From Ylistrum balloti (Eukaryota), in assembly GCF_031769215.1 (NCBI RefSeq), contig NW_026782137.1, positions 434,001 through 498,000 of the forward strand: DNA of 64,000 bases, read 5' to 3'. The notes under the pieces were generated by a model, which made no database searches, was not told the origin of the DNA, and saw nothing but the letters and a program-made list of their open reading frames with translations. This document shows, one piece after another, positions 2,481-50,238 of this stretch (within the stretch, counting starts at the first letter, position 1; each line of letters opens with the position of its first letter). Made by a program: the position numbers and the translations under genes.

Positions 2481-3298
2481 TTTGAAATAAGTGTTGTTAG
2501 ATTTTAAATTGAGTTCTATCTGATTCACTTTTTCTTTGATAATGATCATGAACATACACCGATCCAGTACAAGAGTTTTTTATGCCATTTGGTCACTTTC
2601 TAAATACGTTTTAACATTAACATCTGGTTCAAAATAGGCTCTCTTAATTATTGAGTATTAATTTACATGAAATTATCGACCACATCTTTGCATTTGACTA
2701 GCAAGTCATTCTAAACATTACCACCTTACAAATCACCATATTTCAAAATTTTTGGCGATAGTTTGCATTATCATATCACCCAAGAAATTGACATATCTAT
2801 CTGGGTCTCGATGATATTGAATAACTACATTATTTCAAAACTACAATCTTTCCCAAGAAGCCTCCGGGGCTGTATTTGCTATCATACAAGGAAGTATGCG
2901 AATTATTCTCGACAAGTGGCAGCTGTCACATCCATATCGGGCGTTCAAAGTGGCATCGCGATTCGTTATGTGTATACAGAAGACAGAGAAGCAAATAGCT
3001 TTGAGTGTCCATCATGAGTCAATAGGATGATTGGCGAAGCCATTTTGATTCTCCTTTTGCACAGCACTGCAGTGAAAGCACCAAATACAGGCAGCAGCTT
3101 TCAGATGCATCTGTTGCACAGACTCCAAAATGGCGATATGATTTTCAGTCACATTTCTTACCTCAAACACGCAAGAGTTCCAATAAAAAAATAATGCGAG
3201 TCTGGGATTATTTCATTGAAGACTTTCAACGACCAAAATTTGTGAACGATTTTGAACATAATAGTACTACCACGGACTTATATACACCATATATATAT

Positions 3299-3754
3299 AT
3301 TCCATATGAAAATCCTCAAGATGAAAGATTGGACTGGCTGAAAAATGACTTCTTGGGCTACCTGAACCAGTGGAAAAACAATGTGAATGGAAGACCAAAT
3401 CTGACCACTTCGGAGAAAGCTAGCATGTTACTGAGTCATCAGACTGTTACTGGCCTTGAAACATCAGTTAGATCAATCACAGAATGTGTAAAATATATCC
3501 TGAACCTCGGAGCAAGTTTTGTGTTGACTCATGCTTTTAATCAAGATCCTCTTGAGGAACATTTTAGTCACCACAGGCACAAAGGAGGAGCCAACAATAA
3601 CCCCTCTGTTTATGAAGTGAGAAATGCACTTACACAAATCCGTGCAATAAATGCTCAGGCACTGGTTCCCAAAAGAGGAAATACATTAACTGTTGACAAT
3701 AACATGCAAATTGACAATACCAGATTGCCACGCAGAAATGTTATGAGACTGTAA
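3299..3754 (+). pseudogene. P-element/THAP9-like transposase, C-terminal fragment of the catalytic domain (5' part deleted)
   Basis: Open frame PYENPQDERLDWLKNDFLGYLNQW...MLLSHQTVTGLETSVRSITECVKYIL...FVLTHAFNQDPLEEHFSHHRHKGGANNNPS. The VLT-x-x-FNQDPLE-x-x-F-x-x-x-R-x-x-GG-x-x-x-NP motif is characteristic of P transposases. Homology starts about 12 bp after the left TIR, behind a (TA)n run; the THAP domain and the rest of the core are absent. Confidence 0.85.
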
Positions 3755-3936
3755 TGGTTGTCTTGTTGTTGAATGTACATCATGTAAAATGTAGATTTGT
3801 ACAGCTTGCTTATTACTTTAGCACCAGAATGTCAATTTTACTTTTTGTAGATTTTGTTAAAAGATTGAATTTGTAACTGCTTTGAAGCAGTTCTTTTCTT
3901 TAAAGTGTGCTGTCAGAAGTTTCTTTAAAAGTACAT

Positions 3937-4327
3937 TGTATAATATTCAAGGATGTATGAAAGTGTGTATAATATGTAAGGATGTATGAAAGTGTGTATA
4001 ATATGTAAGGATGTATGAAAGTGTGTATAATATGTAAGAATGTATGAAAGTGTGTATAATATGTAAGGATGTATGAAAGTGTGTATAATATGTAAGGATG
4101 TATGAAAGTGTGTATAATATGTAAGGATGTATGAAAGTGTGTATAATATGTAAGGATGTATGAAAGTGTGTATAATATGTAAGGATGTAAGAAATGGTGA
4201 ATAATATCACAGTATGGATGAAAGTGTGTATAATATGTAAGGATGTATGAAAGTGTGTATAATATGTAAGGATGTATGAAAGTGTGTATAATATGTAAGG
4301 ATGTATGAAAGTGTGTATAATATGTAT
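3937..4327. repeat. 29-bp minisatellite, about 13 copies
   Basis: Unit AAGGATGTATGAAAGTGTGTATAATATGT repeated head to tail, with one diverged unit near 4190-4215. No spacers. Confidence 0.95.
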
Positions 4328-4989
4328 ATATATCCAATAAAAACAAAAATTTCATTTATGACATTTTGTGTAATGCTTTAATTAATTACATTTCAATGGT
4401 TTTGAAGTACCAACATAAATTATATATACATTGTATGTGAACACAGACTTTATTGCAGTTTATAATGGTTGCACATGAAACACCATCAAGTCTTAAATAA
4501 ATCAAATCATACAATTATATACAACCTTGCAGGAGTAGTGATGAACTTTTAATAACAAAAAATGCAAACTTTAGTTATTTGAACAAAAATGAAATAAAAA
4601 GTTGATGTGGACTTGTAACAAGATAGTGCCTTATCAATATGAATACTATTTACATTGTTGTCTTAAAGAAATATTTTCAACTCCCATGAACAAAGGCAGG
4701 TCATGCATTTACTTAACTTGGGCTTATTGCTGAGAAACAGTAAATATTGTGTGATCATATATCTAGAAGGCTGAAGTTTCAATGAATGTCAAACTTTTGT
4801 AATTTCTCAGATTAGCAGAAGTGATACTATGCCAGCAACAGTTCTGTTGTTTCTATCAATTTAGTAAATCATGGACTGAAATTCTTAGAATAAATAGTAT
4901 AAACAAATCAGCTGAAGCTATTTCCCCACTAATATAAATGAATGAGTCGACAGTAACTTAGAATGTATCCCACATGAATGAAATTTACA

Positions 4990-7900
4990 TCACTGTTTTA
5001 AATTTCCACGTAGACTTTTTGAAGGTTGGCACTTGAGATTGACTTTTGCCAATTTGTTTTTTTGTATTCTCACCATGGCATTTCCTCTTATGGTAAGAAA
5101 TAGATGGACAACATCTTCTAAAATCTTGGTTGGTGTTTCTGGGCATTCCTCAAGCTCACAACTGAATATCTTTGAACTGTAGTGTTTCACCATAAACTCT
5201 TCCATCAGGCACTCTTTCAATGGCTCCAGGTTGAGTGAACTTGACGTTAGGCAGTTTTCCTCAATAGTGTTTCTCACAACAATTTCTAACTCGCGTATCA
5301 AAAGGAAAAAATCGTCACAGGGAAATCTCAGACCACCTCTGTCCTTCTTCCTCGTCCAAGTTTGAAATTTTGTAACGAAAGTTGTTGGCTGATGAACACA
5401 GTCTACTTGCAATGAATTCACTACAGTTAACCTGTCTTTGAAACTTTCACACTTGGAATACTTTTGATTCAATGATTTCAAAATATAACCAGAAATGTAA
5501 AACAGAATCTGCTGGTCTCCATCAGATATTTGCAGTTGGCGCTCTTTAGAAATGGCAGTCTTGACTGATATTTGGGTGGACAAAATTTTCTCTAATAATG
5601 TCAGTAGAAGTATTTGTACAAAGTTATGAACTGATGATATTTCAAAACCTAAACTGGTGTATAGATTGATGTATTTTGTCCTGAGATCCTTGTTAATGCG
5701 AGCAGTGTGTAATTTTCTTAACAAAGACTCCCTTTGCAGAGCTGAGGAAATTTCAATACCTGATGAAAATAAGTCTGTGAATAAACTGAAGTAAAAATCT
5801 TCTAAACAACAGTTCCCTAGAGTGAAATCACATAACACTGAAAAATTAGGACCCCCAAGAAGTTGTTGCAGCTCGTCAGCCTTCAGTGAATGTACTGCTA
5901 CCCGGAAACTCTCCTTGAAACTGTCTGGTGACAACTCACATGTATCCTGTTTGACTGGAACCTGCACTACTGGATAGTTGCTGGTAGTGTCACTGGGGAT
6001 TTTACTGGCTCTGGCACTCTGGCTTTTATTGTCATTAGCTGAAAAATATATGAGAACATCAGGGGGTGATCTTAGTGTAAACATTGAATTTTTGCAAAAT
6101 CACAATAGTTTCATTTTTAAATTTTTTAAATGATTTTAAATAATGTTCAATTGTCACTTTTGTCAGTGTTTATTTGACAGAGTTATTGCCCCATTGTTAA
6201 CAAAACATCACACTTTGTTTCCATGCAATAAGTTTAACAAATGTTGACAGATTTTCTTCATATTTGATAACAAGGTTTAAGGAATAAAGTGCTTGACTGA
6301 ATTTGATTGCCACTTTTTTCATAGTTGTTTACCACCAATATGCCGGGAATGTACGTGAAATAAATTCCACGAATTTGCTCGTTAATTTGTAAATCAATAG
6401 TAACTCAAATTCATTAAAATTGAACCCCCACAAATATGGATGATTATACAGTAACCATACTAAATGATTTTACATTAAACTATCTTTGTGACAAAACAAG
6501 AACTGAGAGTTCAAAATACAAATATACATTTTGTGGTGTAAGTACCCATACCAACAGAATATATGATTAATCTGCTTTAAACCATTAGAGTGCAAGTAAA
6601 TGTTGAATTAAACTCGAGTTAATTTGTAATTCACTACAAAATAAAATGGCTTGGGATATTACAGTTAAAACAGAACTTTGTAAAAGAATGTGCATAATTA
6701 GTCATTCATAGCAAGCCAAACAAAAGTAAATAAGATTCTGTGATTGTCCATAATGTCATTGAAGTATTTGTTTTGAATTAAGTCACAAAATATTTACTGT
6801 CTTACAGTTAACTTGTTACAGTTGAAATCCAGTCTTACTGTTGAATTATGAATACAGCTTTAATCAATCATCATCATTATTATAAACAAATTCATCATCC
6901 TCCCTTTGATTATATTATCATTCTCATGATAACACCATTATCATCATCATCATGCTATTAATCATCATCTTAACCATCATCATAAAAATCATCTACCTTG
7001 TTATAATCTTGATAGTCAATCAAAATCAGCAAAAGACAATATCCAGACAGCAGAGAAGAATTTGTCATTTTCCTCATGCACATTTTCACACGCAGACAAC
7101 ACTCACACATTTTTCATAGAATGAAGAAAGAAAATGTATTGATGAATAGAGAGTGTGAGATGGAGAAAGAGGTCATCAGATAATAAATAGAGAGAGCAAG
7201 ATGGAGAAAGAGGCCATCAGATAATAAATAGAGAGAGCAAGATGGAGAAAGAGGCCATCAGATAATAAACAGAGAGAGCAAGATGGAGAAAGAGGCCATC
7301 AGATAATAAATTGATAAAAAAAAAAAAAAGAAAATCATCAGTCGACACAAAAAATCAAGTTTGACAAGGTTTTCCCATTTTTCCATTTGTTAATAAAATT
7401 TAATTTAAAGGTGTCATTTCTGCTGTTTGAGACATATAATTGAACAGAAAAGACTTTGTGCAAGGGCATTGATAATTAAAGAACTACAGGTATGCAGACA
7501 TCTTGTCTTTATAATGCAGTTTTTGATCATTGAAATTATGTCATTGTCATCTCATAAACTAGAGCTATTTGTAACTTTCAATTACAAATAGAAAACATTT
7601 TCTGTTAAAAGATGATGATATAAACAATGCACCAGTAAGCAGCTCTTGTATGGGTACTTTCTGGAACCAAGGAAGTTTCATATTTATCATTACCTGGAAT
7701 AGCATTTTATAGATATCCTTTCATATTTTAGAATAATTCATTAATATAACATTAATGTATCATATACTATAGCTGCAGGTGATAATTTAAGAAAATCATG
7801 CACTTTTCCCTTTTGTTAGATGATTACCACATCTCAAAAATGTTTTCTCTTTGACAAAGAATCTGACATTTATCATCAAACTAAATGACAACGGAATATG

Positions 7901-8497
7901 GTTATTACTTCCTGAAGATTTATAATTACATTTTTATCTACACTTAAAAGGTAAAGTTCCACTCAATATAACTGTGTGTTTCTTTTCTTCTTTTTTTTTC
8001 TTTGCTGAGATGAGGTCAGGAAAATAATACCAAGTCTACTGTTAATTTAATGTATTATAATAAAATTATTTATTTTCTTCACTCAATAATGATTATTAAA
8101 TTTAAAGTGCTGCAGGAGAGTTTAAGTAAATATATACTTATCAAATATTTGACCTGAATCAAAGAAAAATAAAAAGAAGTTTGCATCTTCTGAAACAGAA
8201 AATACTACTAATGTATGTAGGCCTACCTTTTAAATCGTTTCTCCCGTGTTTTCTAGAGGTGTGACCACGAAATCCAGCTATAGTCTTTAGCTGTTTACTA
8301 CATACAGGGCAAGTATAAATAGTTCTTGTAGTTGGTGGTAGGTTTTCTTGATCTAATTTTCGTTTTTTCACCACAACACACTCCTCAACATCACTTTCCA
8401 AATCGTTCTCTACATTGTCATAGTCGGTATATTCTTCCAGTAAGAAATCTAAGTCTATATCGCTATCCCAGGAAAGAAAATCAGACTCTTTTGACAT
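4990..8497 (-). CDS. Transposon-borne two-exon gene: acidic N-terminus, KKRK, one C2H2 zinc finger, C-terminal domain resembling the P-transposase C-terminal module (439 aa)
   Basis: Exon 1 is 8497-8227 (90 codons + G, donor G|gtaggc). Exon 2 is 6038-4990 (acceptor ttttcag|CT). The phase-1 junction gives ...RNDLK-A-NDNKSQ..., 1320 nt with no internal stop. Zinc finger CPVC-x12-H-x4-H. C-terminal motifs ILFYISGYILK...C...KKDRGGLRFPCDDFF. Confidence 0.82.
7158..7310. repeat. 41-bp minisatellite, about 3.7 copies, in the intron of the transposon-borne gene
   Basis: Unit AGATGGAGAAAGAGGCCATCAGATAATAAATAGAGAGAGCA starting at 7158, 7199, 7240 and 7281. Confidence 0.93.
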
Positions 8498-8503
8498 TAA
8501 CTC

Positions 8504-8554
8504 TTGAAGCTCCGATAACTTTTTTTTTTTTTTTTTTTTGAAGCTCCGATAACT
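8504..8554 (-). mobile_element. Poly(A)-only insertion flanked by a 15-17 bp target-site duplication
   Basis: TTGAAGCTCCGATAACT (8504-8520), then 17 T, then TTGAAGCTCCGATAACT (8538-8554). Confidence 0.75.
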
Positions 8555-9016
8555 GTAGTCTTCCTTCGATTAAAACGAAATGACTGTTTTAGACTTACCT
8601 CACTCTTCCCTTACGATTGCGTCGGGCTGGCGCCATCAGCACATATTATGGTTTCATTTAACGCATTATTTGGGCTGTGTATCGAGCTGTCAAATCAATG
8701 TCACATCATCGGTCGCTGATGTAAACAAAATGCCGGAAATCGAAAGAAGCGGTCCGCGCAGGCGCGATAGGAAGGATTAAAGGTAAATTGAGAGGCAGAC
8801 AGTCGTTACGCTCCGCTGCGCAAATATAAAAGGTGGACAATACACATGCGGAGCTGAAGACAAGTTGCCTATCCCTGTGTATATAAGTCCGTGGTACTAC
8901 CGTTGACTACAAATGTCATCAAACAAGTAACCACAAATTAAAAGTTTCTATGTTATTTGATAGCATCAACAAAGGGGGATAACTCTCAGTATTTATGGAC
9001 CAAAGCACTGGGAAGG

Positions 9017-12000
9017 ATGGTGGTAAGCGAGTAGCCAGTTATTTCAATGGCCATTTTATTGTTGTTAACCTTTAATTGTGTCAGTCATCATACAAATGAT
9101 CTGTATTGGTTATTCCATTTTGTATTTATAACTAGATAATGTTACAAATTAATGACAGAGATTAGGCTCACCAGTCACTCTTCTTCTATATCAGTTGCTA
9201 TGTACAGAACTACATATATGGGCAACTTCTTCTGACTGAAGACAATGTCTTCTTCGTAGAAGTAGCACTTGGGGCCTTCAATTCTCACGATTAGTCCCAA
9301 GGTGTTGAACTATTTTTGTTTTTTTTTAAAGATAAAAAAGATTTTAATGATAGGTAATCATGGGTGTCAACAGTGTCAGCAGAAATAGAAAACTAAGGGA
9401 GTGAGTTCCATTGTGTGATAGATTTTGAATGGAAGGAGTGTTTATAGCAGTCTGTAGAAGTTTGAAAGTGCCTAAAAACATATGGGTTGTGATGGCTTGA
9501 AGTCGACAGGGAGAAATTTTTCAGGATGAGATGCAACAAGGCCATGTACTATTTTGTAGACCATAATAAGTCTGTTTTGCAAGTGGTGAATGTGAAGTGG
9601 TGCCCAGTGTAGAGATTCAATCATGTTAGTGATGGAGCTTATATCGTGGTAATTGTTACACATGTATCTGGCGGTTCGATGTTGCACTTTTTCTAGCTAG
9701 TTTATCTGTGATGTAGTGTGTGGATCCTAGAATGTTGCTCTCTATTCTGGCATAGGACATACTAGCGTTTAATAAACATGATCTTTAACATGTGGAGAAT
9801 TTACTTTTAATGGAGTTGATGCAGATTCTTCGAGTATTTGTCTATGGATTTTGTCAGAACCAGAGGTTAATGTTTTTTAAGAGCTTGATGACTATATTGA
9901 CAGAAATAGAGATAATTTGGTAAGGACAAGGGCCTTTATCAGGTATAGAGATACAGACTGAGGAAGTCACGGCTTCTTGGAATTAATTGTTTAAGATGTT
10001 GGCTTTGGATATTGGATCCTCCACTAAGAGTTTCTAATTTTTTTTGTACTTCTCTTTTCATTTTCCACTTTTTTTTTTCACTTGAGCATATAGCTTTTCA
10101 TCTGTGTTAACTTTTCTTAGTTGGCCTTTGATCCAGGGAAGGTTTTTGTGTTTGAGGGTTTTTATGGGATGTTCTGTTCTAATGGTTTTGAATATGGTCC
10201 TTAATGTTTCTATGTTTGTGTCATTATTTTTCACTTAAAGGGTATGGTTTATGTCTTTTTTGGTCGTTATTAATTTTGTCCCAGTTAGCTTTCTGAAAGA
10301 GATGTATTTTTCATGGTAGGAATTTATTTCTTGTAAGGGAAACCTGAAAATCTGCCAAGATGATGTCATGCTCTGACGTGTCAAATGGTGGTGTGTATGT
10401 TGTCTGTAATGATTGGGGTATTTGTGAGGATGAGATTTGGTTAGGTGAAGGGTGAAGTCGGGTTTCCCTGGAATTGTACCGTGAAAAGTCGAGTGTATGT
10501 TACTGAGATTGAACCTCCAAGGATCAGGGAGGATGTTGGTGCCAGAGCGGAATCTATGAAGAGATTAGCATAGTTGGCGAAGTGATTCAGAAGGCAATGA
10601 AAGGAGCTAGTTAATATTTTCTCACAGTTGTTGATAGATATTTCTGCTCAAGAGTAGAGGAAAAAGGAAGAGGAATGTACGATTTATCCTTTACATATTT
10701 AGTTTGGACTGGAATAAGCATTATAGTGGGCAGTTTTGAAAGAAACTTTTGTGGAGCGGGAGAACATATCTAGTGGAAGTTTTGCACCTGCATACACCCA
10801 TGTTCTCGATCCGTGTTCTAATTTAGTTTAGTCCATCATTATCAATTCGATGAAACATTCAAAGGCCTCCCTGAAAGTGGCATGCCATACGAATATGAAT
10901 TTTGGATGATACCTTTTACATCAATAACGTTTCATGAAAATGAATCAGAGTTTTTTTTATTTAGTTTGACTTGAAAAATAGGTCAATAGGACAAATGTAA
11001 TCCAAGATGCCAAAAAAGGGACCTAACTCCTCTTAAACATCGATTACAAAAGAATTTGCAAAATGTAAAACTCTGTATCAAGCACTTACAAGTGTTTCAT
11101 CACAAAAATAATTTGAAAAGTAGCTTGCAGTGAAAAGACTAACTGGACAGATAATAAATGCTTCCAATGGTTTATGATACAAGCAGTGTATACACCCTAA
11201 ACTTCATTGATGATATTGAAGTAGAAATTCCTGCAATTTAGTACATTTATGTACTAGCAGAGTATCAGAGGTCCATGACACAGTGAGTCAACATAGTGTT
11301 GGTTAATTAATTGGAATGGTTCTGACTATCAATCTGTGATTGTATTTTGTCTTGCATGGTCATGGATAGATAGACAGAGATGTACATGTATATATCACAA
11401 TGGTAGTGATATAATATTCACAATATTGGTATGTTTAAAACTGATGACTTATCAGTAAATAGGTCACATAATATATATATAATATTTTTTTATTCTGCTA
11501 TAATTATCTATTTTTTTTTGCTAAAACTTTGCATTTTATAATTACTGCCACACTGATTAAACACTTAGTATGGTACATGTATATCTTCAGGGTTACTGAA
11601 TGATATCTTATTCTGAGTTTTTTTTATTTCATGAGAAATTTGGCGTGTCTCTAACTTACCATGGCCGTCAATTTGAGACAACATGATGCTGTTCCCAATG
11701 ACAGTATTTTAACTTGTCGATGTTATATATATACGTCAGGAAACTATGGGAACAAACATTTTTCTAGATAAAATGGCATATTTATTTATCTTACAGAAAA
11801 TTGGTCTCCAGTTCAAAGCTGATTTAGAATTTTTAACAAATTTAAGACCAGATGGAGAAGATTTTAGGTGGTATGTGAAGGTAAGTAGATCAGGCTATGA
11901 TTTTTAATTGTCTATTTATCAAATTGGTGTTTGGACAAATTGATGATACATGTATAAGGTTAAGTGTAAAACTCAATGTGAACATTATGTAAAGTATATT

Positions 12001-15000: not shown

Positions 15001-18000
15001 ATTCAAGACAGTTGTGGTGTTTGATTGTCGAGGCATGGAACCTGTCGACTTTTCCCCGAGAGTAAGTGTAGCCAACTCAGTTACAGGTTGATGGTTAATT
15101 TTGTTCTCATTTAACATGTCTCTGTGTGGTTGATTTTTCCTGCTATAAAAGGATCATTTTGAAGACGAAACTGGCAATGTTTGATTCTGCTTAGTAAATT
15201 TAGGGCCCTTCATGAAGGTGCAAATACCCTATAGTAATCATGGTGTCTGTCTGTCTGTCTGTCTATCAACACTTTTGTTGCCTTGTGATGATTTGAGTTT
15301 CCTTATTGAAAGTGCTTGCATGGGATTGCTTTTCAGCTTAAAGGGTCAAAGGTCAAGGTCACTTACTATAAATAGAAAATCAGATTCGCTGCAATAACTC
15401 AAATTTGCTTTAGCCAATCAAACTAAAACCTCATACAATGTCCCAGATTGCTTTTCAGCTTCGAAAGTCAAAAGTCAATGTCACTACTACTATAACTAGA
15501 AAAATCAGTTTCCTTGCAATAACTCAAGTTTGCTTTTGACCAATCAAACTCAAACCTCATACACTGCTTCCTTACTAAAATTACTGGCTTTGGATCGCTT
15601 TTCAGGTTTCAGGGTCAATGGTCCAGATTACTGTTACTCTAAGTAGAGAATTGGTTTCCATGACATAACTTGAGTTCCCTTGGACCAAACAAACTCAAAC
15701 TTCATGCACTGCTTTCTTACTGAAAGTGCTTACTTTTCAGACTCAGAAGTTAAAGGTTGAGGTTATTGTTGCTACAATGGAATATCCATTTTGTGGAATA
15801 ACTCAAGTTTGCTGTAGCCAATCTAAATCAAACTTCACACAATGCTTCCTTCCCAAAAGTGCTTGCTTTGAATATTGCTCTTTATATCCCAAGTTCTAAG
15901 GTGAAGGTCACTGTTGTTAAAATATTTAAATGAAAAATCAGATTGTTGAATGTATTTTTTATTATTTTTTTTTTTTCGCAACAGTCTTTCTTCAATTTTG
16001 TGGCAAGGAGTTTTTCATTGTGTTGTATTATGTGTGTAAGCAAAGAAAACATTTTGTTGTGTTGTAGGTTGGATTTATGGCTGAGGGATCAGAAACAGGT
16101 ACAAAGTTTCCTGAAGTGGAATTAACAGAAGGTGTAAGTATATAGATAAATTTGTGTCTATTACATCACATGACTTTTTACTTCCATTTTGACAACAACA
16201 GCAACATAATGGATAATTCATACACAATCCATATAAACAAATAGCGATATTTACTATTTATCTGGGAATCTGGTCGGGATCTTTCCTTGATCTCCGACAG
16301 ATTCCCGCGCATAGCTTCTTGGTAACTGCGGACGTGTCTTCGCTATATACATCGATTCCACATAGGGATGGCATTCTTGCGGCCAAACGCGCTTTGGATA
16401 CTAGAGGTGATAATTCTCCACCTACATGGATCCTCCTGCGGTTTCTACATTTTGTCTTGACTTGTAATTGTTTTAGATTTAACAACCAACATTACCTTCA
16501 AATTCAAGGCACTAGCATGGGTACCAAATGTGCGCCGAACTATGCCGTTTTATTCATGGACCAACTTGAAACCAATTTTCTAACATCTCAACCTCTGAAA
16601 CCTCTAGTATGGTGGAGGTTCATCGATGATATTTTCTTTATTTGGACCTTCCGTCGCGAGGACCTTTGTGCCTTCATGGAGAGTCTCAACCGATTTCATC
16701 CCAAAATTAAATTCACCTATGAGGTAAGCTCTACCAGTATGAATTTCCTAGACACCACGGTAATCAAAGAGGAAGACGGCACATTGCAAACCACATTGTA
16801 TACCAAACCCACGGACGCACATCTTTACCTTCACTATCATTCATGCCACCCTCGTCAGCAAATCCGGAACATCCCGTTTGGACAACTCCTCAGGGTACGC
16901 CGTATATGTTCTACGTTGGACGAGTTTGAAAAACATAGCCGAGTCATGTGTGACCACTTCCGACTACGGGGATATCCACGGAATCTTTTAGAGTCGGCCA
17001 CAGTTAAAGCGAGGAACACCGATAGATTAACTTTACTTCGGAAGGCGGATACAAATGCCAAAACCATTGTTCCATTCATAACTAAATACGATCCTCATCG
17101 TCAACATATAGGATCAATCCTGAAAAACCATAGAGGCATCCTCAACCGTATTGGCCCCCAAATGGACCACTCGGTTATCACTCTAGCTTACAAGAGAGCC
17201 AACAATATTAGGAATCTTCTAGTTAGAGCGGACATTGATCCACCAAACCGTACTAAGGGTAGTCAACCTTGTCGCCGACCATGCAATTTGTGTCCGTTCA
17301 TGGAAAACTGCTCCTCCGTTACGAGCAAATCAAACAAACAAACGTTTACCATCCGACACAGTATTAACTGTAACTCTACTAGCGTAGTTTATATGATACA
17401 ATGTCAGAAATGCGGTACTCAATATATTCGACAAACCGGTAACTCCATCAGAGAACGATTCCATGGTCATTTTGCTGATATCAGGAATAAAAACATGCAC
17501 AAACCAGTCTCGCGTCACTTCACCTCTACGGAACACGACACAGAGAATGTGAAAATTATCGGTCTCCAAATCACCCCAGGGAATGTTAATACACGCCTAC
17601 GTACAGAAGAAGCCTTTATCACATACTTGAACACCGCAGAACCACAGGGACTTAATATCAGACACGGATAATCTGGATAACGTCTGGATAACGGTGGATG
17701 TAAACTATTATTATCACTGTGAATCTACTATGTAACATTCATTGTCATACTAGTGACCAATCTTGCGACTTGATATGTATATAGGTGTATATACACACAC
17801 ATTGTGTTTTCATTGGATTTATTTTTGCAAGCATTGGAACTGTAACTCAGCGAACATTCACATAGAACAGCCTTTTATTACTTACCGATAGTGTACAAAT
17901 TGTACATAAATCTTCATCTACAATATTACGCGGCTTAGATTATCATACATATCGGATATATCATCTGTAGTCCTTATGTATTAATAACTCTACTAAGAAT

Positions 18001-43990: not shown

Positions 43991-46900
43991 TTACATTGAA
44001 CTTGCCACAGTCTCTTGAGATCGCGATGAATACTTTGTAGAAGGCCTTTGTTTATGTTTAGTCTTACAGAAAAGTGATCGATAGAGGCGAAACACTCTTT
44101 GATTCCAAACAAAACTGAAAAATATTAGCAAACCTTGACAACCAGTCAGGATCGTTACAATGAAGCTAAAAACTGACAATGGGAGGAACGTGTCTATGAT
44201 GACGAGGATCCAGGTTAGGCCAGTGATTGTAAATAATTTGATGTAAATCACAAAATCGAGCCTGTGGTCCTTAGTGCTCTCTACTTTTGGTGTGTTTTTT
44301 ATTTTTATAGCCACTCTAACAAACATAAACATGTTAATGATGCAAATCAATACAACTGGTGCAAGGAACGTGGCGTAAAATGAAATGTTGTTAGAAATGA
44401 AACAAACGCCACCGCCATATCCTATATCTGTCACACCGGAAATTACGTCATCAGAAAAGGAAACACAATACGAAGTGATAATGTTACCGGCAACAACTAC
44501 CAGCGGTATCCCATATGAGTATGATAGGTATAGCGCTATCTGTTTTCGGGTGTTGCTGGATCTTCCCGTCAATGTATTTACAGCAAACACACTGTACATA
44601 TGAAAGGAACAAACATTCATGCATGTGAACGTGGCTAGCCAGAAATAGTGAGTAATTACTCCTATAGACAAACATAAGGACGGAACAGACGTTTCCTCGA
44701 AACCAAATTGGAATAGTCCCTGCGAGAAAAACATCGCAAAAACAAGACTCATGTTGTTAACTCCTGGGACAGAGCGCATGGCCCGAAATAACAAATACGT
44801 GCCAAATGTTAGAAACAGACAGGTGAGAGAGACTGAGGTACAGACTAACGTTGTAACAGACAGGGCATTTCTAACAGGGTCGTTCTCGGTATTGGCCATG
44901 TATTCGTTTATGAAGCCGAGATAGTCATCTAAGCAAAGCTGTGCGTTACTGTCGGGCATGCGCAGATAACGGTCTCGAGTGAACTTCCTGGAACTGTATT
45001 TCACAGAGAGTTCGAGTGTGTCATGTTTTATACTGTATTCGTGATTACGTAGTACCACCTGGCGGCAAAGCATAACATCAGACACGAGGGCTGTCCGGAC
45101 GGAGGGCAAAGTTGTCCACACCTTATTAAGGAAGATGAAATTTTTAACACAGTAATCGTCAAAGTTGGAACTAGGAGCAGACGGTAGAAAATACGCCTCA
45201 TTTGCAGGTCTAGATCTAAACGTAACATTCGATATAACCAAATTTTCTCTTGTCATGTTTAACAATATTTGTTCTGTAGCTAACCTCTCGACAACTTCCA
45301 ATATAGAGAAAGTTGTCTGAATCAGTAGATGGTGAGTTATAGGTGTTGTTACGTTACCAATTTCACATGATACATTAGACGTGATATGGAATGACTGTAT
45401 AAATAACATCCTTATTGCTAATTTGGTTTTCATTTCAGACAAAATTTTCTTTTTGATGATAGTTAGCAATTTTACAGTCTGTTCGAAATAATCAAGGGTT
45501 CCTTCCAGTGATAGCGTCATAATATACTTCAGATTGGTAGTAGTACGTAAAAGGGGAACGCACTGAGTCCCATCGATGATCTTACCTGGGTAGCAAGTCA
45601 GCAGACGAGGTCGAGTCTGTAATACAGAATACGAAGAATTGCACCTGATCAAAAACCGTGCTCTAAAACATCAAGTGCTGAATAGATATAACTTTAATCC
45701 TCTACAGTCTTACCAAAACGTCAAGCCAAAAACCTTCGAATTGTTATAGATAAATAAATGAACATGTTTCAAAATTGATCATCCAAAACGGGAGTGAATA
45801 AAAAATAACCAAGACCCCAAATATACATGATATGTGTGGAAAAGGCCATGCCCCCTCTAATATAAATAAAGAAAATCATTTACATTGTTTAGGTACTTAC
45901 TGTTATTGGATCAAACACGTGGGTCCCGTTTGTATCTGGCTCGCTCCTTCTTAATTTGTTTACAAATGGACGGAACAGGTCCTGTAAAACGGGCGAAGAC
46001 ACCTCAGGTTTAAAGTTTACGTCTTTGCTGAAGTAGGTATGCATTTGAAACATGATAGGCCACGGCAGCGGGATCTTTGTGTCATTTATGTTACAATATT
46101 GACAGAAAATGTTCTTTGCAGGGAACATGCTGCTAACTTCCGGTGCTTCTCGGCATGCACGGACTATTGCAGCACCATAAAATTTATTATCAGTGCTCTG
46201 ACAGTTTTGGATTAAAGTTGTTGTATTAGTTTCTGACGATGGATTGCATATAAAGCAAAACGTATTTCGGTGGAAATCGTACTGATTTTCAAGGGAGGAA
46301 TTCTCGCACGCCCATCTGATATCTTGGTCGAATTCTTCCCAGTAGCCTGTACTGTTACATTGTTTGTTATGGATTTTAATTGGTGAGAAAAATCCGAATG
46401 CATCCTGCTTACACGATTGACCTTGTTTAACCTTTGTAGATAATACCCTCGTAATGCATCTGTTTCGTTTCGTAGCATCAATAACGCCGTTAAACGTGGC
46501 GTGAAACAGTAAATTCAGGTCTCCCTCGCACTGCATGTCAATGGACCAAGGAAGATAATTGTCATATGACATGATTTTTGATAAGTTTAGTTGAGGAATT
46601 AATATGTCTTGATTACACAGAAAGCAGTCAAAATTTTTATAAAGCATGTTGTTTTCTCCTACAATTGGCATGGAAGAAAATATATCGTTATCAGAAAATC
46701 GGCATCTAGATTGAATGGCCTCAGGCCATGAAGACTGAAAACAGCCATCAATTAAATAATTACTTGGTCCTTCTGTTGACAGCGAAGGTCTCTGGCAGGA
46801 TATCGGATATTCAAGAACCAGGTCAAGACAACATTCCAAGGCATCATCGAAAAAGCAAAGGGGGTTGCACGAACATGGGTATTTCCCAACAGCGTACGGC

Positions 46901-48156
46901 ACCAAGTGTTTGCGACAGTATCTGTAGTACCCTGTCACGCTGAAGTCGTAAAGTAATAGCTTAGATATATTCACAGACCGAGCCTTATCCCAAATAGGGT
47001 CCTCCCTCTTGAATATTTCCTGTTTTGTAGATTCGATAATTGTGTTGTAAAATTCGAGATTGTATGACTTCAATGAAAATGAATATACAAACGTCAATTT
47101 CTGATCTTGTGCGAACATGTTTTCTGACATCCAGTCTATATACACATCGAAGTACTGGGATGAGTGACTGTTATTTCTATTGCAAAGCAAACAAAATACA
47201 TTTTTGTATGGAGCAGCATTGTGTGACATGGCATGCAACTCGCATGCTCGTTTCAAGCGTTCCACGTGAATATCCCATAAACCAGTGACGTTGCATGTTG
47301 ATATGACGTCATTGTTTTTATCAGGAGGATTACACATAAAACAAAAAATATTTTTGTATACACCATAGCGAACTGTGTAGGCAGAGTTACAGGCAAGGTC
47401 GATGTCTTGATCATATGTAGCCCAGGTTCCAGTCTCATTACATCTCGAGGTTCCCATGACATTAATGTAGTCAGCATAGCAATCATGTATATCTTCATCG
47501 ACAGTACTAAATCCCACAGTACAATTCAGGGATTCAGCCTTGTCAACAATTTCGTCAAAATTGGAGATAAAATTGAAATCGGTAAACTCTTGACAATCCA
47601 TTGACATACTCCAGACGTTGTAATCAAGCACACTGTTACATTCGGCACAGAATTTATTTTTAAATATTTGTCTGTAGCGTTTTGATGTAACTGGTGGAAA
47701 TTCGACATTACCCGTTTTAAAAACAACGTCTGTAGTCATACATTGCCTCCTCAGATTGTTGTCAGTGCTGTTTGAACACGAATTAATCATAAACACATTA
47801 TCAGGAGATCGGTTTGGATTGCCAACTTTGATAACAGGACTGACACAAATTGGGAGTGGTATAGAAAAAATCACATCAGCACAACAATTTTCCCTCTTAG
47901 TACAATCTCGGTCACATTTACAATCCTCACAAATGTCAATATGACGTGTGCTGATATTTCGAAATTCAAAGCCTAGTTTATGAGGGTGGCAAAAATAGTC
48001 TGACCCACACAGAAGAAAATATTCATACAATAGCTTTGTAGCATTGGAGATGGTCTGAACTTTCGGATCAGGCTGAAGTCTGTCCGTTAATAACACTGAC
48101 TTAGTTGAAGAAAATATCAGGTAAACCTGAATTACCCTCCAGTGTACGAGCGACAT
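43991..48156 (-). CDS. Family-B (secretin/adhesion/Methuselah-like) 7TM receptor with a large Cys-rich ectodomain (~1293 aa)
   Basis: Exon A is 48156-45901 (donor ACA|gtaagt) and exon B is 45616-43991 (acceptor tattacag|ACT), phase 0, giving FDPIT-TRPRLLTCYPGK. 7TM motifs: CTSVSLTCLFLTF, VPGVNNMSL, CLSIGVITHYFWLATFTCMNVCSFHMY, YGIPL, GYGGGVCFI, FLAPVVL, KLFTITGLTWI, QGLLIFFSF. The open frame extends upstream to 48207, but a strong acceptor (ttttctatgttacag) just before Met 48156 favours that start. Confidence 0.88.
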
Positions 48157-50238
48157 GTCGTTCAATCTGTAACATAGAAAACTTATCCATAAGATTTTAT
48201 AAATCATGCAATCTTATATTTAATGAATGATATGTTCCTTGATAATGTTAGTATTAAATGCACGTACTTTTGACTAAAAAACATTAAGAGCATGAGGCAT
48301 GTCGATAGATATAAGGTTCTTTATAAAAGCTATGTTACATTTTTTTTTCTGTATGTCTTACCTTTGTCTTGAAGATCTATCACATATTGGTATACTTCAC
48401 TTAGCATTGTACTGTAGCTGTTTTCGAAGACTCTTTTAACTCTGATAGTGATGCAGGGTTCCTTTAAGTATAGGTGATGTGTAATTAATCATTTATACCT
48501 TAATCAATACAGACTGTTGACATTCCATTACCATAAACAATTCCACAGAACCGGTAACGCAAATACGAAACCATTCAAAGGATATCAAGTTTGTCTAATT
48601 TGTAATGAAGGATCGACAGGAATTTAATATTTCTATATATAACTGTGTCAAGCATTGACGTAAAGTGATAAGAAAACTATGACAGGCAGCCCGTGTTATG
48701 ATGTTGGGGGAAATTGAGTTTTGTCGACAGGTTAATACATAAGAAGAGAGTATATAAATACTGCGAAAAACTTGCTTTTTCAATATCGTATTTACAAGAG
48801 TTTCTTCATGCACACCACATGACACTCCAAATATATCATTCCTTGAAAGATACACTCGGAAATGTAAGTTATTTAAATTCGTTTGTACATGAAAATTTTA
48901 GTTTACTGGATCTTAGACTGCTTCAATCAGAACGTATAAATTACTATCGTTCTTCCCACTTTTCTCTATCTCCCAAACAAATTTTCCCTTTGTATGAGAT
49001 TTTTTACTTTCTCATATTTGTAAACTCTCCTCATCCTCTATTAATATTGAAATATCGACAAAATGTGTATTTTTATTGATTTTTAAGCCAGAAATGAAAT
49101 CTCACCTTCATAAGAAATTATTCATTGAGTCTAAATAGTGTATCATACTATCTATCCTGATGAAGAGTTTCTCAGTACCTAGAACTACTTTTTCATACAG
49201 GTACTTGAAACTTACACAGGAAACAAATGGATAGTTTAATTGGACAAGGCGAGATTATTTTCATTCACGCTTTTTGTTTGCTTTAATTTACGGAGGGTGA
49301 AATCATGAAATTGATATAATTCCAGATCGTCGAGTTTGGTGGTAAGACCTTGTTATGGATTATTGACATCCATATGACTGTAAAAACGGTCTACATAATT
49401 TCCTGAGCGACGATGTTCTCATGATCCTGTGCGTGACCGTTTCCATTAAGGATGTTATGGCTGGTATTCTAGATAGCTTGACAGTGGTGATGGTAAATCT
49501 CCAATATAAATGTTCACTTCTGTTCTCTACGCACTAGATACAACCGTTGTAAGCAATGTCATGTCTTCAAAAATTGTTGCGAAAAAAACATTACTTGAAT
49601 TTGTTTTTGCTTTCATGTTGGTGGTTGATGGGGTTGATATGTGATGGACGTTACCATCTGACTTATATATATACCAAAAAAATCTACAGTTAAACCTATT
49701 TTCATCATTATATTATCAATTATGTACGTTGATTTTAAACACAAATAAAATTAAGGTTAGTGTTTTCGGAGTAAAAGAACTGATTTTATATGCCTTTTAA
49801 AAAAGAATATTTGCAATATTTTGTTCTCTGGAAGTAATCCTTCCAACCATCTCCGCCTATTTGTACATTATCATTATATTGTTGTGAATGTCATATTTTA
49901 GTTTTCTATATTCCAATCTAATGAAATGGTATATTATATGAACAAATATGTACGGATTGAGGAATATTTGAGTATATGTAGTTTGTGTAAATAAATAACA
50001 TCGGCGAGTATAATCCAGGAAACGTAGAAGGATTTTACCACAATAGAAGTCCAAAGGTTTTGCTATCTTGCTGGTTGGTTTTTCATCAATGGTCTAGATA
50101 TCAGTCTGCTGTGCAGGTCCGCTATCGGGTTCGATCTCCCAACCTGATGTTTGCCTAATTACATAATAATCCTATCAAAATTCTCTGTAAGGGTTTGTCG
50201 CACCTAAATCTATTTTAAAATCTATATGGAATATTATG

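What the first reader, a model, noticed from the sequence alone, without database searches (positions are those of the whole stretch)
3271..8893. P-superfamily transposon that lost its transposase but keeps an intact spliced zinc-finger passenger gene
Seen: exact 17-bp TIRs and a 7-bp GTACTAC TSD define a 5623-bp element. The transposase is reduced to its last ~150 codons, directly behind the left TIR. On the opposite strand a two-exon gene (8497-8227 + 6038-4990) splices in phase into 439 stop-free codons encoding an acidic N-terminus, KKRK, a C2H2 finger and a large C-terminal domain. The ORF track shows only two unrelated pieces. Established: canonical P elements encode a single THAP-DDE transposase. 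Inference: this is a two-gene P lineage whose accessory protein (a regulator, cofactor or targeting factor) is either recent or retained under selection, possibly on the way to domestication.
Basis: partly seen in the sequence, partly recalled or inferred. Interest (0 to 1): 0.82.

Follow-up and report, generated by a model that had tools for sequence, protein, structure and literature searches.

The report
Two-gene P transposon, split transposase
This is a recently inserted, transposase-deleted copy of a scallop jumping gene of the P-element kind whose second gene is not a passenger: it encodes the tail domain that ordinary P transposases carry themselves, joined to a zinc finger. This two-gene layout recurs in molluscs, an acorn worm and amphioxus, and I found no paper describing it.

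Summary
Exact 17-bp inverted ends lie at 3271-3287 and 8877-8893, flanked by a GTACTAC duplication. Only the last 150 codons of a P-type transposase remain. On the minus strand, two exons (8497-8227 and 6038-4990) join in phase into 439 codons.

The genome is the scallop Ylistrum balloti. Contig L004 of the same species holds a longer copy, 98-99.6% identical, with an intact 927-aa transposase and the same second gene. Three DNA runs carry the exact empty site, so the insertion is polymorphic and young.

The second gene is an integral part of the element. A convergent transposase/second-gene pair is present at every locus examined in six genomes, including Mytilus, Ptychodera and Branchiostoma. 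Transposases of this clade stop about 45 residues after the RNase H domain and have no THAP domain and no C-terminal domain (CTD). The second protein's C-terminal half superposes on the whole CTD of the Drosophila P transposase (6p5a: Z 11.4, rmsd 2.4 Å, 118 of 118 residues; next hit Z 7.0).

I read this as a P lineage with a split, probably two-subunit, transposase. That function is inferred, not shown. Nothing points to domestication: other scallop copies carry stop codons, and dN/dS among copies is about 0.8. No RNA run was available.

The parts
3264..3270 (.). Left copy of the target-site duplication GTACTAC
   Evidence: The empty-site contigs in X1, X3 and X5 hold a single copy (joint 3263->8894 skipping 5630 = 5623+7).
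3271..3287 (+). Left terminal inverted repeat, 17 bp, CACGGACTTATATACAC
   Evidence: two exact matches in the window, 0.13 expected by chance.
3288..3300 (.). Deletion junction: 13 AT-rich bases (CATATATATATAT) between the left end and the point where homology to the full-length copy resumes
   Evidence: The alignment to L004 starts at window 3301 = L004 5526. Contigs of X1, X3 and X5 diverge before 3301 into a 30-mer that is L004 5496-5525 exactly.
3301..3754 (+). Remnant of the P-type transposase gene: last 150 codons (residues 778-927 of 927) plus the stop. It holds the RNase H C-terminal motif and the natural C-terminus, with no CTD.
   Evidence: PF21789 E 8e-7. 100% identical to P0166 residues 778-927. 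55% identical to the C-terminus of the Mytilus coruscus transposase.
3937..4326 (.). 29-bp tandem array (13.4 copies) between the 3' ends of the two genes. The array is shorter in the full-length copy L004.
4990..6038 (-). Second gene, exon 2 (349 codons plus stop): linker, N-terminal helical domain, CTD-like domain and basic tail
   Evidence: Homologues found (E 4e-47; 1534 clusters at E <= 1e-3).
5041..5541 (-). Part of exon 2 (its residues 166-332) that matches the C-terminal domain of the Drosophila P element transposase
   Evidence: 6p5a_B residues 617-734: Z 11.4, rmsd 2.4 Å, 118 of 118 aligned, 21% identity. It is the only hit with Z >= 8 among 48,161 chains, and the next hit has Z 7.0. 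An earlier, shallower model gave Z 7.7, also at rank 1. Weak PF12596 hits fall on the same stretch. Precomputed PF22824 THAP9_C hits appear.
5542..5946 (-). Helical domain of exon 2 (its residues 31-165) with no recognised fold or family
   Evidence: Model pLDDT is above 90 here. The best structural matches have Z of 7 or less and are heterogeneous. No Pfam hit.
6039..8226 (-). Intron of the second gene (2188 bp, GT..AG, phase 1). It contains a 41-bp tandem repeat and a poly-A stretch at 7145-7340 that is itself repeated elsewhere in the genome.
   Evidence: Same position and phase in L002 and in the RefSeq model of Ptychodera flava. Genomic contigs run through it. Present in L004 at 2185 bp.
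8227..8497 (-). Second gene, exon 1: acidic N-terminus, KKRK (8357-8368), and one C2H2 zinc finger (8246-8317)
   Evidence: 58% identical to Mytilus P0001 residues 2-80. Identical in L004.
8877..8893 (-). Right terminal inverted repeat, 17 bp
   Evidence: The same end is present exactly in L004 at 10843-10859, next to a different flank.
8894..8900 (.). Right copy of the target-site duplication GTACTAC

Best explanation
The stretch 3271-8893 is a young, non-autonomous, internally deleted copy of a two-gene P-superfamily DNA transposon of the scallop Ylistrum balloti.

In this lineage the transposase is split between two convergent genes.
- Gene 1 is 927 aa in the full-length copy. It encodes an unknown N-terminal region, a coiled coil, and an RNase H domain interrupted by the GTP-binding insertion. 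It ends about 45 residues after the RNase H domain, with no THAP domain and no CTD.
- Gene 2 is 439 aa in two exons. It encodes an acidic N-terminus, a KKRK motif, one C2H2 finger, a helical domain of unknown fold, and the all-helical CTD that canonical P transposases carry at their own C-terminus.

Inferred mechanism: the gene-2 protein joins the transposase as a separate subunit. It would supply the CTD in trans, in the position the CTD holds in the Drosophila complex, between the RNase H domain of one subunit and the GTP-binding domain of the other, touching transposon and target DNA. Its finger and KKRK motif may provide end recognition and nuclear import, in place of the missing THAP domain.

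The window copy lost transposase codons 1-777 and everything upstream of them. The deletion runs from exactly base 17 of the left end, bridged by a 13-base AT-rich filler. This is the shape expected from interrupted gap repair after a P-type cut with a 17-nt stagger. The copy can still encode the second subunit but needs transposase from full-length copies.

Shown: the anatomy, the full-length relative, the polymorphic insertion, the conserved gene pairing, the CTD fold match, and the lack of a CTD in cis.
Inferred: the physical complex, the need for gene 2, the roles of the finger and KKRK, and how the deletion arose.
For: Ends, duplication and splice.

Full-length copy: L004 (Y. balloti GCA_031769215.1, contig JAUZWB010000028.1) has an intact 927-aa transposase at 3196-5979 (+). 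Gene 2 lies at 6965-8013 and 10199-10469 (-), with exon 1 identical and exon 2 differing by one synonymous base. The exact right end is at 10843-10859.

Longer copies in the reads: contigs of X1, X3 and X5 carry the upstream transposase sequence at the 3301 breakpoint.

Empty site: 6.5-6.7-kb contigs of X1, X3 and X5 hold it with 0 mismatches.

Convergent pairing of gene 2 with a P transposase was seen in:
- L001, Mytilus coruscus
- L002
- L003
- L004
- L005, Ptychodera flava, and L006, Branchiostoma belcheri

No CTD in cis: all 94 transposase homologues that reach the remnant's end stop a median of 4 residues (at most 23) after it. RNaseH_C lies 46-48 aa from the C-terminus in all those scanned. 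There is no THAP hit at E <= 1 in P0166.

CTD match: Z 11.4, 118 of 118 residues. Supporting sequence hits to PF12596 and PF22824 appear.

Intron position and phase are conserved in the scallop, L002 and the Ptychodera RefSeq model.

Selection between lineages: dN/dS about 0.07.
Against: - No transcript evidence in the scallop, because no RNA run holds the stretch.
- One contig of run X6 leaves the window exactly at the acceptor 6038 but continues into a sequence that is not exon 1.
- Sequence similarity to the P CTD families is below Pfam's thresholds in my own scans (best E 2.3e-4, 5 of 96 members).
- Foldseek ranked 6p5a_B only 25th (E 1.3).
- The left end of the full-length copy was not found. 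TIRs could not be located in the Mytilus or L002 loci.
- Transposase and gene-2 divergences do not track each other across five loci (Spearman -0.1, n = 5). The Ptychodera pair is 8.5 kb apart and may belong to two different elements.
- Nothing here shows that the two proteins bind each other or that gene 2 is required.
Confidence: 0.75

Rival explanations
1. Gene 2 is an element-encoded regulator rather than a required subunit. A CTD-plus-finger protein could bind the ends or the transposase and damp or time transposition. It would then resemble the truncated 66-kDa and KP repressors of Drosophila P elements, while the catalytic protein would be active alone.
For: Truncated P proteins act as repressors (PMC7776569). 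A deleted copy that keeps only gene 2, as here, would then be a repressor-producing element like KP. Transposase and gene-2 divergences are not correlated.
Against: The clade's transposases all lack the CTD. In Drosophila the CTD contacts both transposon and target DNA in the strand-transfer complex. In Drosophila only the full-length 87-kDa protein catalyses transposition; the 66-kDa form, which lacks the C-terminal third including the CTD, does not. The pairing has been kept across phyla with strong purifying selection. That fits a needed part better than a brake, although a brake could also be conserved.
Confidence: 0.18
2. Gene 2 is a captured host gene, or a host gene in the process of domestication from the element.
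For: The ORF is intact in a copy that has lost its transposase. Databases annotate the homologues as ordinary uncharacterised C2H2 proteins.
Against: A P transposase lies convergent to it at every locus examined, in six genomes of three phyla. It carries the transposase's own missing domain. The insertion is polymorphic. Other scallop copies have the stops S299* and L238* and frameshifts. Among copies there are 9 nonsynonymous and 3 synonymous changes over 1040 and 277 sites.
Confidence: 0.04
3. The two-exon join is a chance in-phase reading. On this view the 2.2-kb interruption is an insertion that broke an originally intronless gene, as in Mytilus, and no full-length protein is made in the scallop.
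For: The Mytilus homologue is one uninterrupted ORF. The interruption contains other repeats. No RNA data exist. The X6 contig joins exon 2 to something else.
Against: GT..AG boundaries with a pyrimidine tract. The interruption sits at the same place and phase, six codons after the finger's last His with a split Ala codon, in L002 and in the RefSeq gene model of Ptychodera flava. The same intron is present in the full-length copy L004. The X6 break falls exactly at the predicted acceptor.
Confidence: 0.03

Closest known systems
Drosophila P element and vertebrate THAP9 / zebrafish Pdre transposons (P superfamily)
   Same: [quoted passage not shown] There are short terminal inverted repeats and a 7-8-bp target duplication. 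Internally deleted non-autonomous copies occur. Breakpoints recur 17 nt from the ends, the stagger of the P cut. An all-helical CTD of the same fold is present.
   Different: The canonical elements encode one protein running THAP, zipper, HTH, RNase H with insertion, then CTD. Here the CTD sits on a separate, convergently transcribed gene, fused to a C2H2 finger and a further helical domain. The catalytic protein has neither THAP nor CTD. The duplication reads as 7 bp, with 8 possible.
PIF/Harbinger transposons (transposase plus a Myb-like DNA-binding protein)
   Same: It works like this system. A cut-and-paste element needs two proteins, and the second carries a DNA-binding motif and a nuclear-localisation-like motif. 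In Harbinger3_DR the second protein recruits the transposase to the ends (from my own knowledge; not checked here).
   Different: The transposase superfamily is unrelated. The Harbinger partner is not a detached piece of the transposase, whereas here it is.
RAG-like (ProtoRAG) transposons with convergent RAG1-like and RAG2-like genes
   Same: Two convergently oriented genes lie between inverted ends and are thought to act as one recombinase (abstract of PMC7204232).
   Different: The proteins are unrelated, and RAG2 is not a fragment of RAG1.
Drosophila 66-kDa and KP repressors
   Same: These are P proteins lacking the C-terminal third, including the CTD, and they are inactive in transposition. 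This shows that the presence or absence of that part decides activity.
   Different: They arise by intron retention or deletion within one gene, not from a separate gene.

Membership tests
P superfamily (P element / THAP9-type transposons) | [quoted passage not shown] | tested here: met
   Full-length copy P0166: PF21787 E 3e-24, PF21788 E 5e-21, PF21789 E 6e-6. The window copy keeps only PF21789.
P superfamily (P element / THAP9-type transposons) | [quoted passage not shown] | tested here: not met
   No PF05485 hit at E <= 1 in P0166 or in its first 450 residues. None in the Mytilus or L002 transposases. THAP appears only in relatives at about 41% identity, such as Stylophora P0271.
P superfamily (P element / THAP9-type transposons) | C-terminal helical domain (CTD; PF12596 / PF22824) at the end of the transposase | tested here: not met
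   Not present in cis: the transposases end a median of 4 residues after the remnant's end. It is present in trans on gene 2: 6p5a_B residues 617-734, Z 11.4, 118 of 118 residues.
P superfamily (P element / THAP9-type transposons) | Terminal inverted repeats and an 8-bp target-site duplication | tested here: inconclusive
   TIRs are met (17 bp exact). The duplication reads as 7 bp GTACTAC, or as 8 bp if the shared C is counted. An 8-bp duplication is the rule in Drosophila and zebrafish.
P superfamily (P element / THAP9-type transposons) | Donor cleavage with a 17-nt stagger inside the inverted repeat | tested here: inconclusive
   Indirect only. The window's deletion starts right after base 17 of the left end. 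Several contigs join bases 14-17 of the left end to the last 16-18 bases of the right end through short AT-rich fillers (tables 5 and 5c). The sides are only 21-22 letters long, and the data are contigs, not reads.
P superfamily (P element / THAP9-type transposons) | GTP as cofactor | not testable with these tools
   Needs biochemistry.
Domesticated THAP9-like host gene | Fixed single-copy locus without ends, under purifying selection in the host | tested here: not met
   TIRs and TSD are present. The empty site occurs in three runs. There are several copies with different flanks. Other copies carry stops and frameshifts. dN/dS among copies is about 0.8.
PIF/Harbinger two-protein transposons | PIF-type DDE transposase, Myb/SANT partner and a 3-bp TSD | tested here: not met
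   The transposase is P-type, the partner has a C2H2 finger plus the P CTD, and the TSD is 7-8 bp. This is a functional analogy only.

The most novel reading that the evidence does not exclude
P transposases exist in nature as a two-subunit enzyme. A large, old clade in molluscs, annelids, echinoderms, hemichordates and amphioxus keeps the catalytic core and the DNA-contacting CTD on separate, convergent genes. The CTD subunit also carries the element's zinc-finger DNA reader in place of THAP. The split could even be the older state, with the single-chain Drosophila and THAP9 enzymes arising by fusion. Control over supply of the CTD subunit would then be a two-gene counterpart of the splicing switch (IVS3) that decides between transposase and repressor in Drosophila.
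Probability: 0.5. Interest if true: 0.75.

Novelty: new variant of a known kind. Interest (0 to 1): 0.62.

Why it matters
P elements are a textbook transposon, and their transposase has been treated as a single multi-domain chain. The cryo-EM structure showed the CTD on a floppy linker, docked on the neighbouring subunit and touching both DNAs.

A natural lineage that makes this domain from a separate gene would support the idea that the CTD is an autonomous module acting in trans. It gives a ready two-component system for testing what the CTD does. It also adds P to the short list of cut-and-paste superfamilies with an obligatory second protein, alongside PIF/Harbinger and RAG-like elements.

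There are practical consequences for annotation. More than 1500 protein clusters labelled 'uncharacterised' or 'C2H2-type domain-containing' in marine invertebrate genomes can be read as transposon genes. Deleted copies that keep only gene 2, like this one, should not be mistaken for host genes.

The scallop element is recently active, so it could be tested directly.

Tried and rejected
- Foldseek against the PDB gave no significant hit with either model. 6p5a_B appeared only at rank 25 (E 1.3) with the better model.
- The ESM Atlas search by features and by shape gave nothing usable.
- A profile of seven homologues against PDB sequences gave no hit at E <= 10.
- Pfam on the window's own exon 2 gave nothing at E <= 10. 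The link to the P CTD by sequence rests on weak hits in relatives and on precomputed PF22824 hits.
- The scallop TIR is absent from the Mytilus and L002 loci. Neither repeat finder on the Mytilus locus nor a TIR+TSD scan of the Mytilus and L002 loci found convincing ends there, so the boundaries of those copies are unknown.
- The left end of the full-length scallop copy is not within the 3195 bp upstream of the transposase start in L004.
- The 5' part of the X6 contig matches nothing I hold.
- A co-divergence test of the two genes across five loci was uninformative.
- Seven literature searches and a word search inside a 2026 THAP9 preprint found no description of a second gene or a split CTD in P elements. 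Repbase and Dfam could not be consulted, so prior curation there is not excluded.
- I considered and rejected a captured host gene, a domesticated gene and a chance splice, for the reasons given under the rival explanations.
Full report
**1. What is in the sequence**

The 17-mer CACGGACTTATATACAC occurs exactly twice in the window, at 3271-3287 (+) and 8877-8893 (-). Only 0.13 matches are expected by chance, even allowing three mismatches. GTACTAC flanks both ends, at 3264-3270 and 8894-8900. The base after the right copy is C, as is the first base of the left end. An 8-bp duplication with a one-base asymmetry therefore cannot be excluded.

Behind the left end come 13 AT-rich bases. After them an open frame matches PF21789, the RNase H C-terminal piece of P-type transposases (E 8e-7).

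On the minus strand, exon 1 (8497-8227) ends in AAG|GTAGGC. Exon 2 (6038-4990) follows ttttcAG. Both boundaries are phase 1. The join gives 1320 nt, or 439 codons, with one terminal stop.

**2. Host and full-length copy**

The transposase remnant is 100% identical over 150 residues to residues 778-927 of P0166, 'uncharacterized protein LOC132556865 [Ylistrum balloti]', which is 927 aa long. The genome is therefore this scallop. Earlier notes of the scan also call it a scallop.

The contig encoding P0166 is L004 (GCA_031769215.1, JAUZWB010000028.1, 14,172 bp). It aligns to the window as follows:

| Window | L004 | Identity |
|---|---|---|
| 3301-4065 | 5526-6300 | 98.2% |
| 4211-8893 | 6184-10859 | 99.6% |

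L004 carries these features:
- an intact transposase gene at 3196-5979 (+);
- the second gene on the opposite strand, with exon 1 identical and exon 2 differing by one synonymous base;
- the same intron, 2185 bp long;
- the exact right end at 10843-10859, next to a different flank.

Its left end is not within the 3195 bp upstream of the transposase start. An acceptor-like sequence just before the ATG suggests a 5' exon further upstream.

The window copy is thus an internal-deletion derivative. It lacks transposase codons 1-777 and everything upstream, with the breakpoint at 3300/3301.

**3. Evidence from public sequencing runs (contigs only, none on record as RNA)**

- Contigs of 6.5-6.7 kb in X1, X3 and X5 (two studies) join 3263 to 8894. 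They skip 5630 bases, which is the element plus one GTACTAC, with no mismatch in the 164 and 157 flanking bases. This is the empty site, so the insertion is polymorphic and recent.
- Contigs in X1, X3 and X5 match the window from 3301 rightwards. Before 3301 they continue into a 30-mer that is exactly L004 5496-5525. In frame it reads GRNKRNPNLA|PYENP, as in P0166. Full-length-type copies are therefore present in those animals too.
- Loose ends at both termini show further copies with other flanks.
- Several contigs join bases 14-17 of the left end (window 3284-3287) to window 8876-8878, 16-18 bases from the right tip. The joins run through short AT-rich fillers: TA, TAA, TTATA, ATATATA, ATGTGTA and TATATGTATA.

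The window's own deletion also begins right after base 17 and is bridged by an AT-rich filler. Together these make base 17 a recurrent breakpoint. Drosophila P transposase cuts the 5' strand 17 bp inside the repeat and leaves 17-nt 3' extensions (PMC7776569).

I infer that this clade cuts the same way. On that reading the mini-joints are excision footprints or minimal derivatives, and the window copy arose by interrupted gap repair. This is inference from short contig sides (21-22 letters), not a demonstration.

**4. The second gene is part of the element**

Homologues of exon 2 include 411-aa 'C2H2-type domain-containing' proteins of Mytilus coruscus and M. edulis (E 4e-47 and 8e-45). They share the same architecture:
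- an acidic N-terminus with the motif DFLSWDxDIDLD;
- a basic patch;
- one C2H2 finger;
- a long helical C-terminal part with the motifs YIxGY, RGGL, FxLIRExE, MVKHY and LFLTIRG.

Exon 1 of the window is 58% identical to residues 2-80 of the Mytilus protein. The two exons are therefore collinear with one gene.

A profile search of 1.84 billion representatives found 1534 clusters at E <= 1e-3 and 559 at E <= 1e-10. The best 150 are all stand-alone proteins of 97-480 aa, and none is a long fused transposase.

Named members come from these species, all labelled uncharacterised:
- Pecten maximus
- Tegillarca granosa
- Mya arenaria
- Haliotis
- Patella caerulea
- Ptychodera flava
- Owenia fusiformis
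- Branchiostoma belcheri

At every locus I could read, a P-type transposase lies downstream on the opposite strand:

| Locus | Organism | Gap between the two genes |
|---|---|---|
| L004 | Ylistrum balloti | 1 kb |
| L001 | Mytilus coruscus | 2.6 kb |
| L002 | unnamed ENA assembly | 4.6 kb |
| L003 | unnamed ENA assembly | 2.2 kb (transposase broken by a retroelement) |
| L005 | Ptychodera flava | 8.5 kb |
| L006 | Branchiostoma belcheri | 0.6 kb |

**5. The intron**

L002 carries the finger exon at 3720-3972. Its donor, AGAG|GTACTG, is phase 1 and lies six codons after the finger's last His.

The RefSeq model of Ptychodera flava has its intron at the same place, also phase 1. It splits an Ala codon, as in the scallop. 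Branchiostoma has a phase-1 intron three codons after the His. Mytilus has none.

This conserved position is the best available support for the splice, given that no scallop RNA run holds the stretch.

One item remains unexplained. A 1784-nt contig of run X6 covers 4375-6038 and leaves the window exactly at the acceptor. It then continues into 113 nt that match neither exon 1 nor anything else I hold. X6 has no depth over the intron or exon 1. It may therefore be an RNA-derived assembly of another copy with another first exon.

**6. What the second protein is**

The clade's transposases end shortly after the RNase H domain:
- PF21789 lies 46-48 residues from the C-terminus in every protein scanned.
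- In 94 homologues the chain ends a median of 4 residues (at most 23) after the point where the window's remnant ends.
- None has a THAP hit until identity falls to about 41%, as in Stylophora. P0166 has none at E <= 1.

Canonical P transposase continues from there through a flexible linker into an all-helical CTD. [quoted passage not shown]

An AlphaFold model of exon 2 built from 96 family members (pLDDT 89.5, pTM 0.83) was aligned to 48,161 representative PDB chains. The top match is 6p5a_B, residues 617-734 of the Drosophila P element transposase. It scores Z 11.4 at rmsd 2.4 Å, with 118 of 118 residues aligned and 21% identity, over model residues 166-332. It is the only hit with Z >= 8, and the next hit scores Z 7.0. 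A shallower model had already put the same chain first, at Z 7.7.

The tool warns that helical models can reach such Z values by chance. Four things make homology the reasonable reading here:
- the match covers the whole target domain;
- it is isolated at the top of the list;
- weak sequence hits to PF12596 fall on the same stretch, as do precomputed PF22824 THAP9_C hits;
- that very domain is missing from the partner gene.

The other helical domain (exon 2 residues 31-165) has no recognisable relative.

**7. Selection**

Within the scallop, the differences between the window and contigs of four runs amount to 9 nonsynonymous and 3 synonymous changes over 1040 and 277 sites. These include two premature stops, S299* in X1 and X3 and L238* in X1. 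There are also single-base deletions at 5254 (X3) and 5057 (X6). This is neutral decay of copies, not host selection.

Between two element lineages (L002 against L003), dN/dS is about 0.07, with dS saturated. The protein matters to the element. This is the usual pattern for transposon genes and argues against domestication here.

**8. Mechanism proposed**

I propose that the gene-2 protein is a second subunit of the transposase. It would supply the CTD in trans. Through its finger and KKRK motif it may also give end recognition and nuclear import, in place of THAP.

In Drosophila, the 66-kDa protein lacks the C-terminal third and is a repressor, not a transposase. Supply of the CTD subunit could therefore gate activity in this clade.

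The rival reading, that gene 2 is a regulator and the catalytic protein works alone, cannot be excluded without an assay. I give it about 0.18.

**9. Novelty**

The superfamily, the deletion derivative and the polymorphic insertion are ordinary. The split of the P transposase, with the CTD fused to a C2H2 finger on a convergent gene and conserved across phyla, is not described in any paper I could find. Repbase and Dfam were not available to me.

I tested that idea here and it holds.

I class the finding as a new variant of a known kind.

Noticed in passing
window 4375-6038 (run X6): A 1784-nt contig covers exon 2 and 615 nt past its stop. It breaks exactly at the predicted acceptor (6038) and continues into 113 nt that match nothing in the window or in L001-L004. 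X6 has no depth over the intron or exon 1. It may be a transcript of another copy with a different first exon.
   Followed up: partly
window 3284-3287 joined to 8876-8878 (tables 5 and 5c): Many contigs consist of about 17 nt of the left end, a 2-10-nt AT-rich filler and about 17 nt of the right end. They look like excision footprints or minimal derivatives, and they fit a 17-nt staggered cut.
   Followed up: partly
window 3937-4326; L004 6168-6300: The 29-bp tandem array between the two genes has 13.4 units in the window copy but only about 4-5 in the full-length copy.
   Followed up: partly
window 7145-7340: A 41-bp tandem repeat followed by a poly-A stretch lies inside the intron. Read depth there is about four times that of its surroundings, and many contigs join onto it. 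It is probably another repeat family nested in the element, and it is also present in L004.
   Followed up: no
L004 1-3195: Upstream of the transposase start there are about 100-bp tandem units (640-1366) and an acceptor-like sequence just before the ATG. No left TIR is present. The full-length element seems to exceed 10.8 kb and to have a 5' intron.
   Followed up: partly
P0166 residues about 180-310; L001 and L002 transposases: A conserved N-terminal region has the motif C-x8-C-x2-C followed by a basic stretch and a coiled coil. It has no Pfam family and could be this clade's own DNA-binding domain in place of THAP.
   Followed up: no
L001 10001-11236: The Mytilus copy of gene 2 is intronless. 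The scallop, L002 and Ptychodera share one intron position, and Branchiostoma has an intron three codons earlier. This suggests intron loss in the Mytilus lineage.
   Followed up: partly
window 43991-45652 (-) and 45889-48207 (-): A long uninterrupted ORF holds a secretin-family 7-TM domain (PF00002, E 3e-18). Directly upstream of it on the same strand is a 772-aa ORF with no Pfam hit. Together they may be an adhesion-type GPCR gene with very large exons.
   Followed up: no
window 16319-17671 (+) and 62130-63017 (+): Retroelement fragments: a weak RVT_1 hit, and an RT-associated RNase H domain (PF17919, E 3e-29).
   Followed up: no
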